A stretch of 64,000 nt of DNA from Corallochytrium limacisporum Hawaii (taxonomy: Eukaryota > Protista > Pluriformea). The DNA lies in assembly GCA_002811645.1 (NCBI GenBank), contig PDIP01000130.1:41775-105774 (forward strand), in the 5' to 3' direction. The notes under the pieces are model-generated. The model did not search any database and had not been told where the DNA came from. It saw only the letters and a list, made by a program, of their open reading frames with translations. The position numbers were made by a program, and so were the translations under genes. Shown here piece by piece: positions 28,019 to 56,520 of this stretch (its first letter is position 1; each line of letters starts with the position of its first letter).

Positions 28019-31000
28019 TTAAGGCATGCTGCGAGTGCTGGCACTGCGCGCCAGTGTAGTGTTGCGCTTCATTCCTGTTTTCTGCACGTACGTACGGTAC
28101 GCACTCTGGAGCACACGGCCGAGATCTTCGCGATGTACTGGTTTCGGAATGTGCTGGTCCATGCCGCTCTGTTCGCACTGATCGCGGTCGTTGCTGGAGG
28201 CCATTGCAGTAAGTGCAATGATATACGTCTTCTTCGCATTCTCGAGCATACGAATCTGCCTGGTGGCCTCGAAACCGTCCATGACAGGCATATGCACGTC
28301 CATGAGGATGAGGTCGTACTCAGTCTGACGACACCGCTCAACAGCTTGAGCACCATCGCCAACAATCTCAAAGTCATCTACGTTGAAGCTAATTAGGTAC
28401 TTCTCGATGACCTTTTGGTTGATGCGGTTATCTTCGGCGACCAGTACCTTAAGAGCCCTGAAGCGGTTCGTATCATAGCCCTTGCGATGTCCAGGCATCA
28501 TATGGCTCCGCTTAAGACTGGCGCTCTGGCTAATGTCAATGGTGAAGTGGAAGGTCGTGCCTTCGCCCTTCTTGGAATCAAACCAGATGCGTCCGCCCAT
28601 CGCAGACACGAGCTGCTTGCAGATCGCCAGACCCAGACCAGTACCACCGTACTTCCGAGTGACACTGGAGTTTTCCTGGGCAAAGGGCTGGAAGATCTGA
28701 GAATGCATGGCTTCGGCAATACCGACACCGGTGTCTTTGACTCGCACATAGAGAATGGAATCATCAGAGGCGGTCGAAGTTGAGGTACTCAGGTCAGAGT
28801 CTTGGTCTGTGAAGTCCCGCACTGGATTAGCCATGGTCACGTTGACAGAAATACTTCCCTTCTCCGTGAACTTGGCAGCATTCACCAGCAAGTTGTTGAA
28901 AATCTGCATTAAGCGTGTAGAGTCAATGTAAACCGTATCCGGCACACTGTCATCAACATGGGTGGCCAGCTCAACTCCCTTCTGCACAGAGTACAGATGC
29001 AGATTGTACAAGCCAGAAACCAACGACCTCATGTCGTGGGGCATGATTTCCAATTCCAAGTGACCAGCACCAGCCTTGGAGTAATCCAAGATGTCATTGA
29101 TGATTAGAGCCAGAGACTTTGATGACTGGTAGATGGTGTCCACCATCATCTTTTGATCCTGCGACATATCAGTAGTACGCAGCACATCGCTCATTCCCAT
29201 GATGCCGTTCAGCGGAGTGCGCAATTCGTGGCTAACGGTAGCAATGAAGTGCACCTTGGCCATGTTGGCCTTTTCGGCAGCTTCCTTGGCTTGGTAAATC
29301 TCGTTCAGGGATTGACGAGAAGTGGTGATGTCGTGAATAATGCACACACGGCCGAGGCATTCGCCGGTATCGGGTGTGATAATGTCCTCAAACTTAGACT
29401 CGCACACCATTTCCGGTGCATTCTTGCGGACAATCAGGAACTCTTTGACTGCGGATGCATCAGACTCTGCGTCATCCAATGCCTGCGCACCAAACTGGAG
29501 GTCGTCCACCAGGTCCAATTTGAGCGGATTGCCGTCCGTGTCTTCAGTCATCTTCATCTTGTTGGCGACCATGAGACCGTACCGAGGGTCCTCTTCATGC
29601 CACGACTTCAGCTCCTCAAGAGAGCGCACACCGAACATGCGCTTGGCCGTGTCATTCATCAAGGTTTCCCCTCCATTCATATTGAGGATGATGACTCCAC
29701 TGGTCATGGAATGGAGCGTGGCATCCAGGAGTGTTGCATTGATCCTGCTCTTTTCTTCACTTTCCACCCAGTCGGTGACATCGTGGAAGATGCCAAAGAT
29801 ACCCTTAATGGTCTCGCCGTCCTCGTGGACCTGGACGTGGCCAGTGCTACGCACGTGCCTGATAGAACCGTCCTTCCGGACCAATCGCAACTGGAACTTA
29901 AATCCAGACTTGTTTGTAATGGCATCCTGGATGGCCGCCGAAACAGAGTCGCGGTCGTCAGGATGGTAGTAATGGATGCCTTGGCTAAGCAGTGGTTCAT
30001 AGGTCAGAGGATCCTCGCCATGGATGCGGTAGGTCATTTGAGACCAGTGAATGCGCCCGTCACCAGCGGCCAGAGTCTCCCCGGGTACGAACCAATGTCC
30101 GAGGTTAGCCTGCTTTTCTGCTAATTCCAAAAGATGCTTCTGTCCCTGGAGCAATTCCTGTTCGTCAACTTCCTTGCTGTTGTCCAAGGTGAAGCCTTGA
30201 ATAATACCGCGCAGTGACTGTGGAGTATCAGGAGACACACCCAGAACCTTGCTGCTTTCCTCCCGTGTCCACGGAACAAACTGTGCGCTTAGGCGCATAA
30301 AGCGGACGTCGCTCCCCTTTTTGTAGCTAAATTGTAAGTTAATAGAGTCCTTCTTGCGCTTCATAAGTTCCCCAAACTGAAATTCCATTCCTGGCCCGTC
30401 ACTCTCTGATACTGCGGACACGAATTCTTTCATGCCGCAACCACGGCGTAGTCCCATAGCGGAAAGGAGCGTGTCGCTCATACTGAACTCCCCAGTCAAG
30501 GGGTCCATAGCAAAGTGACCACCCCCAACTGCCTCCTTTACGCTGTCTCCGATGGTATTGATGGGAGCCACACAGTTGGCATACTCCACTGCGACAATGT
30601 AAAGGGGATTGGACGCAGCCCCATTTTCTGTGCTGTCCATGGACGTAATCTTTACAGGTACACATGCCGTGGATCCTTTGATTGAAAATGGCGCATAAAG
30701 TGCTATGTCTGGATCATCTACAATGCTACTGAGACTCACAAGATGGCTCTTGAGGGCCACAAGAAAATGAACTAAACTGCGCTTGTCCAGACCGTGCCAG
30801 TCAGTCCATTCGCCTATCGACTCAACTATCTTACCGTCTACTTGTGCACATATTCCCAAGAAGTCACTTAGCCCTTGGGTAATGTGCACCACAACTACAT
30901 CTTTGTCGTCTGTTACCTGCAGAATCATACATTGTGCCTTCGTAATATTGAGCAGCTGAATAAGAGAAGCACGCGACAGATCGTCTCCGACCACAAGTGC

Positions 31001-31126
31001 CGACGACCCATCGCTCAGGGTGCTCATATTTTCGCTACCCTTGATTGAAACGATATGGTCTCGTTCAATACTATCAATTTTTGATACCGCCTTGACGGTA
31101 CAGTCCGTCATTTTGTACAAATTCAT
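28019..31126 (-). CDS. Hybrid sensor histidine kinase (PAS/PAC-HisKA-HATPase-receiver)
   Basis: PAS_3-like YYHPDDR...RLVRKDGS; H-box VSHELRTPLNGI; N-box NLLVNAAKFT; G boxes DTGVGI and GGTGLGL; receiver AEDN..ILMDVHMPVMDG..KP. No obvious TM segment. Confidence 0.96.
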   Translation of the reverse strand: MNLYKMTDCTVKAVSKIDSIERDHIVSIKGSENMSTLSDGSSALVVGDDLSRASLIQLLNITKAQCMILQVTDDKDVVVVHITQGLSDFLGICAQVDGKIVESIGEWTDWHGLDKRSLVHFLVALKSHLVSLSSIVDDPDIALYAPFSIKGSTACVPVKITSMDSTENGAASNPLYIVAVEYANCVAPINTIGDSVKEAVGGGHFAMDPLTGEFSMSDTLLSAMGLRRGCGMKEFVSAVSESDGPGMEFQFGELMKRKKDSINLQFSYKKGSDVRFMRLSAQFVPWTREESSKVLGVSPDTPQSLRGIIQGFTLDNSKEVDEQELLQGQKHLLELAEKQANLGHWFVPGETLAAGDGRIHWSQMTYRIHGEDPLTYEPLLSQGIHYYHPDDRDSVSAAIQDAITNKSGFKFQLRLVRKDGSIRHVRSTGHVQVHEDGETIKGIFGIFHDVTDWVESEEKSRINATLLDATLHSMTSGVIILNMNGGETLMNDTAKRMFGVRSLEELKSWHEEDPRYGLMVANKMKMTEDTDGNPLKLDLVDDLQFGAQALDDAESDASAVKEFLIVRKNAPEMVCESKFEDIITPDTGECLGRVCIIHDITTSRQSLNEIYQAKEAAEKANMAKVHFIATVSHELRTPLNGIMGMSDVLRTTDMSQDQKMMVDTIYQSSKSLALIINDILDYSKAGAGHLELEIMPHDMRSLVSGLYNLHLYSVQKGVELATHVDDSVPDTVYIDSTRLMQIFNNLLVNAAKFTEKGSISVNVTMANPVRDFTDQDSDLSTSTSTASDDSILYVRVKDTGVGIAEAMHSQIFQPFAQENSSVTRKYGGTGLGLAICKQLVSAMGGRIWFDSKKGEGTTFHFTIDISQSASLKRSHMMPGHRKGYDTNRFRALKVLVAEDNRINQKVIEKYLISFNVDDFEIVGDGAQAVERCRQTEYDLILMDVHMPVMDGFEATRQIRMLENAKKTYIIALTAMASSNDRDQCEQSGMDQHIPKPVHREDLGRVLQSAYRTYVQKTGMKRNTTLARSASTRSMP

Positions 31127-53153: not shown

Positions 53154-53850
53154 CCGCTGTGTTGCATACAAAGGGTGGATGGTAACACTCGGTGGAGCCT
53201 TTTTTTTTGTCTTTCTTTGGCATTGGCTTTTTCTCTGCGTCTTCCATGGGCGTCGTCGTGCCGAGGCCCCCAGGAGGGGGGGGGGGTTCAGTCCCCTCGG
53301 GTGTGTGCGTTGTTGTGCGTGTGTGTGTGATACTGCCAGCCAGCCAATCCCGAAAACAAAAGCGGCGAGGCGGGGAAGGGACCGGGCAGAGAGCGCGAAA
53401 GCGCGGCCATTTGGGCATTTTTACTATTCTCTCTGTCTCTGGTCTCTCTCTAGATTCTAAGAAAACAAAAAAGAAAAGGTTGAAGGAAATAGGCCCCGGA
53501 TTTGCCCCCTCCCCCTTCCTAACAAATTTGGAAACCCGCGTAGGGAACACAATGCCTTACGGGTCTAACCATTTCGGTGGAAACCACGGAGAAGGAAAAC
53601 TTATTGGGCACAGCCCAAAGGAGAAAGTACGATCAAAGAATTAAGTCCCGAGAAACCACAAACGAGGCACCAATACCACGGCTTGCGCAGTTTCTCCAGC
53701 ATGACCATGACTCTACTAGTGCATGTATTCTGGAGCAGGTATTTCGGAATAGTCAGGAGGGATCCAACCATGGACAGGTCTCCGAGCACCAATGAAACAG
53801 CGTCTTCGATCGGTCAAAGTGACAGGTCTGCAGACAAGAGTTAGTGTACC

Positions 53851-54501
53851 ATGGCACTTCCACCACAGTATGAGGCACCACGGCAGGAAAAGACCGCCAA
53901 AGTGCGGGAAGAATTGCAAAAGTTTGTCAATTCGGAGGCCGGCAAGCAATACTTTATGACCAGTTTCCAGTCACAGTGGTTTGCGCCCGGATGGTGTGGT
54001 CCGGCAATTCACCCGAGGTTCGAAGTTCGGGACAAACAGGCAATGGAAACGTTTGCCACCAGCGGTCTGCCGGCCACTCTGGAGAAGCAGGGCCTGCAGG
54101 TGTCTGCCGAGCTGACGGCTACCCTGCTTACCATGCTCGAGGATACGGATGTCCACATTGACGATGAGAAGACCACGGAGCGCGGTGTGGACGTCTTCCT
54201 CAAGCCTCAATGTGGACACCACGACCCCGAAGAACTGGCAGTTGATGATGACCAGGAAGACGGTACACCAGCCTGCACGCACCCGATCCACATAGCGCTG
54301 GCCAAGCTACAAAAGGCCTTGATGACTGCGACACACGCACCCACAGCTACTCGCGTGCAGCACGCCGCAGAACTACTCCTGGCCTACCGCACGCAGGTAC
54401 CGCGCTTGGCCTCATACTGCCTAGGCGACGCGAAATGCTACAGCGCTGATTTCCAGTCACATCACGACGCCATTGTCAAGGCCATCAATGGAGAACAGTA
54501 A
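53851..54501 (+). CDS. Orphan protein, 216 aa
   Basis: accATGg start, coding-like codon usage and an A/T-rich 3' flank; no recognised domain. Confidence 0.7.
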   Translation: MALPPQYEAPRQEKTAKVREELQKFVNSEAGKQYFMTSFQSQWFAPGWCGPAIHPRFEVRDKQAMETFATSGLPATLEKQGLQVSAELTATLLTMLEDTDVHIDDEKTTERGVDVFLKPQCGHHDPEELAVDDDQEDGTPACTHPIHIALAKLQKALMTATHAPTATRVQHAAELLLAYRTQVPRLASYCLGDAKCYSADFQSHHDAIVKAINGEQ

Positions 54502-54910
54502 AAACATGACCAGAGAGCACAAAACCCCCAGAAGGCGCCACATTAAAGCAAGCCAAACAAGAAAGCCACATGTATGGTGCAAAACTACGACTAGTGTTGT
54601 TTTTATGCCTTTTGTTTTCTTCATGCTGAAAACAAAAAAAAAAATAGGAAATGATGAATAATATTTGAGAAAAGTATTTTGATATGCAGTGAGCGAGAGG
54701 ATTGAAAAAAGAAAAAAGAAGGAATCAAGAAAGCGGGCGAGCGAGCGACATGGTCATGTTCCAAATCTTCTTCGCTGGCACACTTGTCCTTCTCCGTCTT
54801 TAATCCCTAATTCCCGCCGAAATGAAAAATCTTAATCTACCCGTTACTTGTATGTAAGTCTTTGTCCCATGATAAACTTTGAAAAATCTTTCAGACAGAT
54901 TCTCAAAAAT

Positions 54911-55255
54911 CTACTTGCGCTGGGCACCCTGCTTGTCACCGGGGCGAGGACGGAAACGAGGAGGAGGGTCACGGTTGCGGCGACCCTCGCGGCTGCGGAC
55001 ACGCACAATCTTGGAGTGAATGGCGGCAGAGATGCTGTAGTAGACCTTGCGGTAGATCTTGGGCACAGAGTATCCCTCGTACACGGAAGCCTCCTGCAAA
55101 TCACGCAAACTGCTGGCGTCGACGACATTGCGGATAATGTAGCGCTTGATGGCCTTGTCCTTGGGCACCATGGCACCAGAGGACTCGCAGCGCACACGTT
55201 TCACGCGGCCACGGCCAGACTTGTTACGTCCATTGTTACGGCGCTTCTTGGTCAT
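54911..55255 (-). CDS. RPS26: 40S ribosomal protein eS26, zinc-finger-deficient variant
   Basis: [29 protein letters not shown] and PPPRF; only one Cys remains. Confidence 0.97.
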
Positions 55256-56033
55256 GATTAACTAACCCGGATTCAAACAATATTATCTGAGTGTCAAACC
55301 GTGGGTACAATGGTTTAAAATTTGGAACTGTAGATTACATGTACCTCATTATGTAGCTTGCATATATCTGTACTATCCGGGTTTCGTGCTCTATCCCGAT
55401 ATTACGGAAGTTTTCTATTATGACTGTACGTCGCATTCAACAATGAAGCCCCCCGATAGCTGGGGTTCTCGTCTCCAAAATGTTGGAACATTGGACAGGG
55501 GAGCGCAAGGCTACGGAAGCCCAAAACCGGTGGCTCAGCCACCGGCCCCTTTCACTTTTGGGCAGGCGTCGTCCACCCATAGGTTTTGGCCCGGTATACC
55601 AACTCCCCTTCCCCCACCCTTCCCATGTTTAAAAACTTCGCCGGGAACGGGACACCCACTGGTGGGTGCTACCTGCGCCACATATTCACTATATGGATCT
55701 GGTACATGAGGTCGTTGCAGTATATTCAATATAGAACATCCCTGGCCGAGGGCCCACCGTCAATTCGGTCGAAAATAAAGAAATTTGTAAGAATGGCCAA
55801 AACTTTTCCTGCTCTGGTCCCCATCAAAAACTTGTGTGTGTTTTTGTCCTTTTTTCATCCACAATTTCCCAACACGAAATATTTGTGTGTGTTTTCTTCT
55901 TTTTCTTCGGTTTCCGCCCCCCCCCCCCAACCCCCTTCCCCAATAACACATACTGACATGTACGAAATTATCCACAACAATGAATATATATATTAATTTT
56001 TCAGCAAGTGGTTACGTACCGCGCTTATACACA

Positions 56034-56115
56034 GACAACGTGCCCGAGTGGTTATGGGGTTTGGCTGCTAACCAAATGTGCTTCGCACGCCAGGGTTCGA
56101 ATCCCTGCGTTGTCG
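56034..56115 (+). tRNA. tRNA-Ser(GCT), intronless; CCA follows at 56116-56118
   Basis: Acceptor GACAACG/CGTTGTC; anticodon stem TTTGG/CCAAA with loop CT-GCT-AA; long variable arm GTGC-TTC-GCAC; T-arm CAGGG-TTCGAAT-CCCTG; discriminator G; oligo-T terminator from 56123. Confidence 0.96.
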
Positions 56116-56520
56116 CCAGGTCTTTTTTTTTTATTTTTTATTTTTTTTGCACTTGACAAGTCCCGTTTGGTGCCAATTATCACTCTGTGTATCATGCTGG
56201 CTCCATGTTGCTGCATGTCCGAGTCTGATCANNNNNNNNNNNNNNNNNNNNNNNNNNNNNNNNNNNNNNNNNNNNNNNNNNNNNNNNNNNNNNNNNNNNN
56301 NNNNNNNNNNNNNNNNNNNNNNNNNNNNNNNGGGGGAGGGAGCGAGTGTACAAGTGGGTTTTTCTCTTTTCTTTTTCTTTGTGGGGGGGGGGGTGCGTCT
56401 GTGGGACGGGGTATCATAGGCCAACGGATTCAGAGCAGTTCACTACCGTGCTTGGGTGAGGGCGCGAAGATCTTGACAATGGGGTCTCAATGCTCGAGGT
56501 TTCCAAGCCAAAAATAATAA

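What the first reader, a model, noticed from the sequence alone, without database searches (positions are those of the whole stretch)
54911..55255. Zinc-free ('C-minus') ribosomal protein eS26
Seen: the canonical C23-x2-C26 / C74-x2-C77 zinc site (RCTNC...YCVSC in animals, equivalent in yeast) is replaced by RCESS...YSISA, so three of four ligands are lost (S26, S74, A77) while the rest is highly conserved. Established: bacteria swap Zn-binding ribosomal proteins for Cys-less paralogues under zinc limitation, and yeast Rps26 is exchangeable and oxidation-sensitive. From recall, chlorophyte algae carry nearly the same VRCESS.AMVPKDK / [16 protein letters not shown] version. Inference: either algal-to-holozoan transfer of a core ribosomal protein, or a zinc-sparing or oxidation-resistant alternative-ribosome system if a Cys-containing paralogue coexists.
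Basis: partly seen in the sequence, partly recalled or inferred. Interest (0 to 1): 0.8.

Follow-up and report, generated by a model that had tools for sequence, protein, structure and literature searches.

The report
Zinc-free ribosomal protein eS26, sole copy
A single-celled relative of animals has as its only eS26 ribosomal protein gene a version lacking three of the four zinc-binding cysteines; the same version occurs in every green alga sampled (Chlorophyta) and arose separately in sea squirts, although yeast experiments indicated this zinc site is essential.

Summary
Window 54911-55255 (minus strand) is an intronless 114-aa eS26 gene (Pfam PF01283, 161 bits). It keeps C23 but has S26, S74 and A77.

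- **Real host gene.** It is the only eS26 locus in the 24.1-Mb assembly. It lies on a contig whose UBA1 gene is holozoan-like, uses the host's ribosomal-protein codon bias, and occurs in two independent probable RNA assemblies.
- **No zinc-sparing switch.** There is no Cys-containing paralogue. eS27, uS14, eL37 and eL43 all keep four Cys.
- **Widespread class.** The motif is not unique: all 19 named chlorophytes, three tunicates, stramenopiles and many marine protists carry Cys-poor eS26.
- **Recurrent loss.** On columns outside the zinc-coupled set, tunicates return to chordates. Zinc loss therefore recurred, at least three times, with the same replacement residues.
- **Origin unresolved, leaning to transfer.** Syssomonas (Colp-12), from recall its likely sister lineage, is canonical. 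The full alignment rejects a holozoan placement (AU p = 5e-6). The 78 uncoupled columns lean green but reject nothing (p = 0.21 and 0.26). I put replacement by a green-algal-type gene at about 0.55 and parallel loss in place at about 0.33.

The scan noted this same stretch twice before, not on other DNA. I found no paper describing natural Cys-less eS26.

The parts
54911..55255 (-). Complete intronless CDS of cytosolic small-subunit ribosomal protein eS26, 114 aa plus stop
   Evidence: ORF. Pfam PF01283 at 161 bits. Full-length match to solved eS26 chains. GC3 0.72, Arg 21/21 CGY and Lys 11/12 AAG, like other ribosomal-protein genes of the host.
55151..55201 (-). First former zinc knuckle, residues 19-35 ([17 protein letters not shown]): C23 kept, C26 replaced by S, with E24, S25 and G27
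   Evidence: The 17-mer is identical to several chlorophyte sequences (for example P0017 and P0003). Canonical proteins have R-C-[ST]-N-C-[AGS]-[RK]-C here.
55007..55060 (-). Second former zinc knuckle, residues 66-83 ([18 protein letters not shown]): C74 replaced by S, C77 by A, H/Q72 by Y, with R69 and V71
   Evidence: The 18-mer is identical to several chlorophyte sequences (for example P0006 and P0016). Canonical proteins have Y-C-[VI]-S-C-A-I-H.
53800..55221 (.). Span covered by contigs of two independent 2015 runs of the same organism, probably RNA assemblies. It covers eS26 and the convergent neighbour gene; the flanking intergenic DNA is absent
   Evidence: records 2 and 3 (1415 and 1377 nt). 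They are colinear with the genome, with no joint. The tool guesses the RNA nature of these runs; it is not on record.
55340..55348 (-). TGAGGTACA element about 90 nt upstream of the ATG. The same 9-mer lies about 100 nt upstream of the host's eS27 gene, and AGGTAT variants lie upstream of eL37 and eL43. Possibly a 5'-UTR intron donor or a ribosomal-protein promoter element
   Evidence: by inspection only. It was not tested statistically or with reads.

Best explanation
This is the organism's only, constitutively used gene for ribosomal protein eS26. The protein sits on the 40S platform at the mRNA exit channel like any eS26, but it cannot form the canonical four-cysteine zinc site because three ligands are gone. 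Inference: the knuckle is instead held together by a fixed set of replacement residues, namely E24-S25-S26-G27, Y39/I40, D46, R69, V71-Y72, S74 and A77. This makes the ribosome's most oxidation-prone zinc site metal-free and thiol-poor. The protein belongs to a widespread 'green-type' Cys-poor eS26 class. That class is fixed in all sampled Chlorophyta and arose independently at least in tunicates and stramenopiles. In this genome the gene most likely replaced the native holozoan eS26 by transfer from a green-alga-type lineage and was then fully adapted to host codon usage. The transfer step is the weakest link. The confidence given is for the whole statement including transfer. For 'sole, constitutive, canonical-zinc-site-free eS26' alone my confidence is about 0.85.
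For: - **Identity and motif:**
- **Sole copy:**
- **Other zinc ribosomal proteins intact:** eS27, uS14, eL37 and eL43 each keep four Cys.
- **Host context:** UBA1 on the same contig hits animals, Syssomonas (Colp12) and Capsaspora at 55-58% and no algae. A DNA contig spans the gene and both flanks, and two independent probable RNA assemblies cover the gene. Codon bias matches host ribosomal-protein genes. The eS26 chaperone Tsr2 is present.
- **Class is widespread:** all 120 best word-search hits are Cys-poor. Among 50%-identity representatives, 101 are CCCC and about 45 are Cys-poor, of several subtypes.
- **Recurrence:** on 78 columns outside the tunicate-defined coupled set, tunicates group with vertebrates inside a starred Holozoa clade. 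The Cys-poor label needs 5 changes on that tree, and starred branches force at least 3.
- **For transfer, trees:** with all columns the Cys-poor clade has 100/99 support with the query inside the green-type group, and the AU test rejects query+Syssomonas+animals at p = 5.5e-6.
- **For transfer, uncoupled columns:** on the 78 columns a starred opisthokont clade (97/92) still excludes the query. A green-versus-opisthokont profile score is +7.7 bits for the query, against -16 to -49 for 21 real opisthokonts, -22 to -35 for the zinc-free tunicates, and +15 to +45 for 19 real chlorophytes.
- **For transfer, signature residues:** the query lacks N86 and K93. All six canonical holozoans and all three tunicates in the sample share these residues.
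- **Likely sister lineage:** Syssomonas eS26 is canonical CCCC.
- **Yeast context:** C23S and C74S are lethal and zinc-free, C77 mutation causes a strong growth defect, and C74/C77 are the preferred oxidation sites (bioRxiv 10.1101/2022.07.28.501866).
Against: - On the 78 uncoupled columns the AU test does not reject query+Holozoa (lnL 9.0 lower, p = 0.21). It does not reject query+chlorophytes either (3.2 lower, p = 0.26).
- With another mask (columns 19-31 and 66-80 removed, 97 rows) the tree holding the query with opisthokonts had a higher likelihood than the quick free tree (p = 0.83).
- The query's score on uncoupled columns (+7.7) lies below the range of every real chlorophyte and resembles land plants (+4 to +8). 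It is 'generic' rather than specifically green.
- I41 and G91 are opisthokont states never seen in the 19 chlorophytes. D96 is shared only with Syssomonas.
- Tunicates prove that 11-14 of the same states can arise in place.
- The gene has no intron, so gene structure gives no clue to origin. No neighbouring algal gene was seen.
- Zinc content was not measured. The structure prediction was too poor to show what replaces the metal.
Confidence: 0.55

Rival explanations
1. Same function, different history. The native holozoan eS26 lost its zinc site in place, as in tunicates, and structural constraint drove it to the same replacement residues as green algae. No gene transfer occurred.
For: - Tunicate Cys-poor eS26 shares 14 of its 25 derived columns with the query, including E24-S25-S26-G27-A28, Y39, I40, D46, V71, Y72, S74 and A77. 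Yet it keeps the animal signature and returns to chordates when those columns are removed. The AU test does not reject tunicates+animals even with all columns (p = 0.18).
- For the query, identity over the 78 uncoupled columns is similar to chlorophytes (82% Trebouxia), fungi (79.5%) and Syssomonas (78%).
- The holozoan placement is not rejected on those columns (p = 0.21; p = 0.83 with another mask).
- I41, G91 and D96 are opisthokont- or Syssomonas-like.
- S26 (TCT) and S74 (AGC) are each one nucleotide step from Cys codons.
Against: - Unlike the tunicates, the query keeps almost no opisthokont signature outside the coupled columns: +7.7 bits against -22 to -49.
- It lacks N86 and K93, which are shared by Syssomonas, animals and tunicates.
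- By my count from the alignment, about 31 of its 37 differences from Syssomonas land on states common in chlorophytes.
- With all columns, the placement with Syssomonas and animals is rejected (p = 5.5e-6).
Confidence: 0.33
2. Zinc-sparing or oxidation-resistant alternative ribosome. The Cys-less eS26 is a stress paralogue swapped for a Cys-containing copy, like the bacterial C-minus paralogues.
For: Only by analogy with Zur-regulated bacterial C-minus paralogues and with Tsr2-mediated Rps26 exchange in yeast. A Tsr2 homologue exists in the genome.
Against: - There is one eS26 locus in the whole assembly.
- eS27, uS14, eL37 and eL43 keep four Cys and are single-copy hits.
- The gene has the codon bias of a highly expressed ribosomal-protein gene.
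- It is present at high word depth in both probable RNA assemblies from ordinary cultures.
Confidence: 0.03
3. Algal contaminant or chimeric assembly. The gene does not belong to this genome.
For: The closest homologues are chlorophytes.
Against: - The best chlorophyte identity is only 79%, so the gene matches no sequenced alga.
- It lies inside a contig of more than 100 kb with uniform GC of about 0.5 and holozoan-like genes.
- One DNA contig covers the gene and both flanks, and two further independent runs of the same organism hold it.
- It has host ribosomal-protein codon usage and no intron, whereas the two chlorophyte genes examined have 1 and 4 introns.
- The published culture was axenic (PMC5560861).
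Confidence: 0.02
4. The protein still binds a metal, through C23 plus non-thiol ligands. It would then be 'zinc-poor' rather than zinc-free. This is not exclusive of the explanations above.
For: C23 is invariant in all 34 aligned Cys-poor and canonical sequences. Many chlorophytes also keep C74 (pattern CSCA). H80 is invariant and E24 is a new carboxylate next to C23.
Against: In yeast a single C23S or C74S change already gives zinc-free protein. Here three thiolates are missing, and A77 cannot ligate a metal.
Confidence: 0.1

Closest known systems
Canonical eukaryotic eS26 (yeast Rps26A/B, human RPS26)
   Same: It has the same family, length and domain (PF01283 over the full length). It is 60-65% identical to chytrid, Syssomonas and vertebrate proteins, with the same invariant basic N-terminus, PKDKA and AIH motifs and the PPPRF tail. 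The dedicated chaperone Tsr2 is present.
   Different: Three of the four zinc ligands are replaced (S26, S74, A77), together with about a dozen co-varying residues. In yeast, C74S is lethal and C77 mutation is strongly deleterious.
Chlorophyte eS26 (Trebouxia, Chlamydomonas, Chlorella, Picocystis, Micromonas and others)
   Same: Both knuckle motifs are the same, in places identical over 17-18 residues. These proteins give the highest overall identity (up to 79%) and group with the query in full-length trees.
   Different: The host is a holozoan, not an alga. The gene is intronless, while Chlamydomonas incerta has 1 intron and Chlorella vulgaris has 4. Outside the coupled columns it scores below every real chlorophyte and carries I41, G91 and D96, which the 19 chlorophytes lack.
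Tunicate 'eS26-like' (Styela clava, Clavelina lepadiformis, Ciona savignyi)
   Same: It is another holozoan with C-S-S-A at the ligand positions, with E24-S25-S26-G27-A28, Y39-I40, D46 and V71-Y72.
   Different: Tunicates keep the metazoan signature (K38, N86, K93-D94, T96) and group with vertebrates once the coupled columns are removed. The query does not. The tunicate genes have two introns at positions of their own, after nt 125 and nt 245.
Bacterial C-minus ribosomal protein paralogues (bL31B, bL36B, uS14 C-minus; Zur regulon)
   Same: A zinc-ribbon ribosomal protein has lost its Cys ligands while keeping its ribosomal function.
   Different: The bacterial proteins are conditionally expressed duplicates beside a C+ copy. 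Here there is no C+ copy, and the Cys-poor form is the constitutive one.

Membership tests
eS26 / Ribosomal_S26e (PF01283) | Full-length match to the family profile above the curated cut-off | tested here: met
   161.4 bits against a cut-off of 27, profile positions 1-105 of 108. E about 3e-41 to solved eS26 chains.
eS26 / Ribosomal_S26e (PF01283) | Four-cysteine zinc site (C23, C26, C74, C77) | tested here: not met
   The pattern is C23/S26/S74/A77. This feature characterises the canonical subfamily, not the Pfam family: 101 of about 147 diverse representatives have it.
eS26 / Ribosomal_S26e (PF01283) | Incorporated into 40S subunits | not testable with these tools
   Indirect support only: sole copy, codon bias of a highly expressed gene, presence in probable RNA assemblies.
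Green-type Cys-poor eS26 class (defined here) | C23 kept; E24, a small residue (S/A/T/Q) at 25, S26 and G/A27; R69, V71, Y72, S or C at 74 and A at 77 | tested here: met
   All states are present in the query. They are shared with the 19 named chlorophytes at 63-100% consensus frequency.
C-minus ribosomal-protein paralogue system (zinc-responsive switch) | Loss of the Cys ligands in a zinc-ribbon ribosomal protein | tested here: met
C-minus ribosomal-protein paralogue system (zinc-responsive switch) | Coexisting C+ paralogue in the same genome | tested here: not met
   One PF01283 locus in 24.1 Mb. The only other hit has E = 0.088 and is spurious.
C-minus ribosomal-protein paralogue system (zinc-responsive switch) | Induction under zinc limitation | not testable with these tools
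   No zinc-limitation expression data were available.
Horizontally acquired (xenologous) gene | Supported nesting within a donor clade, away from the host's relatives | tested here: inconclusive
   All columns: inside the green-type clade, and the holozoan placement is rejected (p = 5.5e-6). On the 78 uncoupled columns the query is outside a starred opisthokont clade (97/92), but AU gives p = 0.21 for Holozoa and 0.26 for chlorophytes.
Horizontally acquired (xenologous) gene | Close relatives of the host carry the native type | tested here: met
   Syssomonas (Colp12) eS26 is CCCC and groups with animals at 97/90. Other unicellular holozoans could not be retrieved.
Horizontally acquired (xenologous) gene | Physically integrated in host DNA, not a contaminant | tested here: met

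The most novel reading that the evidence does not exclude
A core cytosolic ribosomal protein of a close unicellular relative of animals was replaced by a green-alga-type, metal-free version. More generally, the eS26 zinc knuckle, reported as essential in yeast, has been discarded repeatedly in eukaryotes: in all sampled Chlorophyta, in tunicates, in stramenopiles and in this lineage. Each time evolution followed nearly the same path of about a dozen compensating substitutions. The result is a ribosome whose most oxidation-sensitive site no longer needs zinc or thiols.
Probability: 0.45. Interest if true: 0.75.

Novelty: new variant of a known kind. Interest (0 to 1): 0.6.

Why it matters
Current work treats the four-Cys zinc site of eS26 as conserved across eukaryotes and as essential. 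It is also the preferred oxidation target that triggers Tsr2-mediated ribosome repair.

Natural Cys-poor eS26 proteins contradict the generality of that view. Here one is the only copy in a holozoan, and the same type is fixed across green algae and present in tunicates. Together they supply a ready-made set of compensating substitutions that can be tested in yeast.

The parallel evolution in tunicates is a clean case of highly repeatable molecular evolution in a core machine. If transfer into this lineage is confirmed, it would be a rare replacement of a core cytosolic ribosomal protein between eukaryotic supergroups. It would also be a warning for phylogenomic data sets that include rps26.

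Tried and rejected
- **AlphaFold2 on a 34-row alignment:** mean pLDDT 59.2 and pTM 0.39. This is too poor to show what fills the zinc site, so no fold search was run.
- **PDB search for a solved Cys-poor eS26:** the best matches to both the query and an oomycete Cys-poor protein are canonical vertebrate chains. No structure closer to the Cys-poor class than canonical vertebrate chains turned up.
- **Intron positions as a test of tunicate gene origin:** not decisive. Tunicates have their own positions (after nt 125 and 245) and lack the intron after nt 181 that a catfish, Chlamydomonas incerta and Chlorella vulgaris share. The exons were only threaded on the genomic loci.
- **Quick trees on 97-104 unnamed representatives:** unstable. 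The constrained tree beat the 'free' one, so I rely on the careful named-taxon trees.
- **The listing of cluster members on representatives:** most carry no name.
- **ESM Atlas:** returned only generic eS26 clusters (one search failed).
- **Literature searches:** searches for natural Cys-less eukaryotic eS26 found nothing relevant.
- **Not obtained:** Raw-read evidence for the 5' end of the transcript is also missing, because the one read-laying run was used on contigs.

Full report
**1. The observation**

The ORF at window 54911-55255 on the minus strand encodes 114 aa. It matches Pfam Ribosomal_S26e over profile positions 1-105 of 108 at 161 bits, against a cut-off of 27. It aligns without gaps to solved vertebrate eS26 (E about 3e-41). 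Against the canonical ligands C23/C26/C74/C77 it has C23/S26/S74/A77. The codons are TGC, TCT, AGC and GCC.

**2. It is a real gene of this genome**

- **Genome.** The window is G000:C34:41775-105774 of a 24,109,830-bp, 286-contig assembly. The size matches the published 24.1-Mb genome of Corallochytrium limacisporum, which was grown axenically (PMC5560861). That identification is an inference.
- **Context.** GC is uniform, about 0.5, along the window. The 1023-aa UBA1 on the same contig finds animals, Colp12 (Syssomonas, by recall of the strain name) and Capsaspora at 55-58% identity, and no algae.
- **Reads.** A DNA contig covers 53600-56000 without difference. Two runs of the same organism from two other studies hold contigs covering only 53800-55221. 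That span is eS26 plus the convergent neighbour gene, without the intergenic flanks, and it is colinear with the genome. The tool guesses these are RNA assemblies, so expression is likely but not proven.
- **Codon use.** The CDS uses only CGY for Arg (21/21) and AAG for Lys (11/12), with GC3 0.72. The host's eS27, uS14, eL37 and eL43 genes show the same bias.

**3. No switch and no general zinc economy**

A six-frame PF01283 search of the whole assembly finds this locus only. A second hit (E = 0.088) lies inside a 688-aa ORF and is unrelated. eS27, uS14/eS29, eL37 and eL43 each keep two CxxC pairs. A Tsr2 homologue is present. The Cys-poor eS26 is therefore the constitutive one.

**4. The motif defines a widespread class**

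All 120 best hits of the word-indexed search are Cys-poor: 62 CSSA, 30 CSCA, 26 CSSS, and one each of CSSV and CTSA. The named hits include:
- Chlorophytes from most classes: Trebouxia (79%, the best hit), Chlamydomonas, Dunaliella, Chlorella, Coccomyxa, Ostreobium, Bryopsis, Neomeris, Tetraselmis, Picocystis, Pycnococcus, Cymbomonas and Micromonas.
- Three tunicates: Styela, Clavelina and Ciona savignyi.
- The oomycete Thraustotheca.
- Many marine transcripts.

The exhaustive search of 50%-identity representatives gives 101 CCCC sequences and about 45 Cys-poor ones of several subtypes. The subtypes are green-type (C-E-S-S-G ... K-V-Y-Y-S-x-S-A-A), stramenopile-type (C-[VA]-S-T-G-K ... Y-Y-C-x-E-A-A) and two marine types. 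Land plants, fungi, animals and Syssomonas are canonical.

I found no solved structure closer to the Cys-poor class than canonical vertebrate chains, and no paper on it. One recent paper states that eS26 maintains the motif across diverse eukaryotes (PMC13090322).

**5. Zinc loss recurred, with the same replacements**

I defined 'coupled' columns without reference to the query. They are the 25 columns in which all three tunicates agree on a state that no canonical animal has, plus the four ligand columns, 26 columns in all. In 14 of the 25 the tunicate state equals the query's state. In 11 it equals the chlorophyte consensus.

On the remaining 78 columns a careful tree gives three results:
- A starred opisthokont clade (97/92) and a starred Holozoa clade (99/89).
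- Tunicates beside vertebrates (93/90).
- Five changes of the Cys-poor label, of which starred branches force at least three.

Even with all columns the AU test does not reject tunicates+animals (p = 0.18). Parallel zinc loss on an animal backbone is therefore well supported.

**6. Origin of this copy**

*With all 104 columns.* The Cys-poor sequences form one clade (100/99), with the query in the green-type group next to the tunicates (85/20). Holding query+Syssomonas+canonical animals together costs 51 lnL units (p = 5.5e-6). Holding all holozoans together, tunicates included, costs 45 (p = 0.014). These tests assume independent sites, and the tunicates show that assumption fails here.

*On the 78 uncoupled columns.* The query stays outside the opisthokont clade. 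However, query+Holozoa costs only 9.0 lnL units (p = 0.21), and query+chlorophytes costs 3.2 (p = 0.26).

*Profile score on the same columns (green versus opisthokont, leave-one-out):*

| Group | Score (bits) |
|---|---|
| 19 chlorophytes | +15 to +45 |
| 21 canonical opisthokonts | -16 to -49 |
| Syssomonas (included above) | -38 |
| Zinc-free tunicates | -22 to -35 |
| Land plants | +4 to +8 |
| Query | +7.7 |

*Column by column.*
- Green-like or generic states in the query: K3, S48, Q54, G61, R104.
- Opisthokont-like states never seen in the 19 chlorophytes: I41, G91.
- D96 is shared only with Syssomonas.
- N86 and K93 occur in every holozoan sampled, tunicates included, but are absent from the query.

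*Reading.* Unlike the tunicate gene, this gene has lost, or never had, the holozoan signature, which favours replacement by a foreign gene. It is not specifically chlorophyte outside the coupled columns, and no test on those columns is significant. I put replacement at about 0.55 and parallel loss in place at about 0.33.

An earlier mask (columns 19-31 and 66-80 removed) on 97 mostly unnamed representatives gave contradictory quick-search results. I discount it.

**7. How it probably works**

Established: eS26 lies on the 40S platform at the mRNA exit site. In yeast its four Cys hold a structural zinc. C23S and C74S are lethal and zinc-free, and C77 mutation is strongly deleterious. Zinc-less protein does not bind ribosomes. 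C74 and C77 are the preferred peroxide targets, and oxidised Rps26 is extracted by Tsr2 (bioRxiv 10.1101/2022.07.28.501866).

Inference: in the Cys-poor class the co-varying set (E24/S25/S26/G27, Y39/I40, D46, R69/V71/Y72, S74/A77) replaces metal coordination by packing and hydrogen bonds. The protein would then fold and bind 18S rRNA without zinc and would lack the two oxidation-prone thiols. C23 is invariant in all 34 aligned sequences, so it presumably has a role beyond zinc binding. A residual non-canonical metal site cannot be excluded. The structure prediction was uninformative (pLDDT 59).

**8. Verdict**

The finding is real. The gene is a sole-copy, constitutive eS26 without the canonical zinc site, in a holozoan. 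The switch model and the contaminant reading are refuted, and transfer is plausible but unproven. The broader result is that eS26 has lost its zinc site repeatedly, by the same route each time. That result appears undescribed in the literature I could search, and it can be tested directly in yeast.

**Limits**
- Only one unicellular holozoan comparator, Syssomonas, could be retrieved.
- The protein is short (104 alignable columns).
- Assembly completeness is published as 83% BUSCO.
- No raw reads were available for the transcript's 5' end.
Exons of five reference genes were only located on their loci.

Noticed in passing
window 53851-54501 (+): A 216-aa ORF with no Pfam family lies convergent (tail to tail) with eS26. 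It is co-assembled with eS26 in both probable RNA assemblies. One run shows A>G at 54345, C>T at 54438 and a 2-nt insertion behind 54767 relative to the assembly, which suggests strain differences.
   Followed up: partly
window 56034-56118 (+): ARAGORN calls a tRNA-Ser(GCT) about 780 bp upstream of eS26. Runs of N (X in the translated ORFs, roughly 56160-56330) follow it, so there is an assembly gap here.
   Followed up: partly
window 55340-55348 (-); L003, L006, L007 upstream regions: TGAGGTACA lies about 90-105 nt upstream of the ATG of both eS26 and eS27. AGGTATT[AT]GTGAG lies at a similar distance upstream of eL37 and eL43. AG dinucleotides lie 7-25 nt before each ATG. The host's ribosomal-protein genes may share a short 5'-UTR intron or a common promoter element.
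   Followed up: no
window 28019-31126 (-): A 1035-aa single-ORF hybrid histidine kinase (PAS, HisKA, HATPase_c, receiver domains) in a holozoan genome.
   Followed up: no
L009 3001-7020 and L012 1501-6025 (Styela clava, Clavelina lepadiformis): The tunicate zinc-free eS26 genes have two introns, after nt 125 and nt 245. They lack the intron after nt 181 (codon 61, phase 1) that a catfish, Chlamydomonas incerta and Chlorella vulgaris share, an apparently ancient position.
   Followed up: yes
P0029 (EukProt Lentomonas sp. LEN2): A Cys-poor, green-type eS26 from a phagotrophic euglenid transcriptome falls weakly among opisthokonts on the uncoupled columns. It is either another independent origin or prey/contaminant sequence.
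   Followed up: no
L005 (G000:C154:101727-101828): A second PF00253 hit is a Cys-poor S14-like ORF (one Cys in the matched stretch). It is presumably the mitochondrial uS14, not a cytosolic paralogue.
   Followed up: no
P0016/P0052 (Coccomyxa elongata), P0038/P0057 (Nannochloris): Some chlorophytes carry two eS26 genes, one CSSA or CSSV and one CSCA. The number of retained Cys therefore varies between paralogues within a genome.
   Followed up: no
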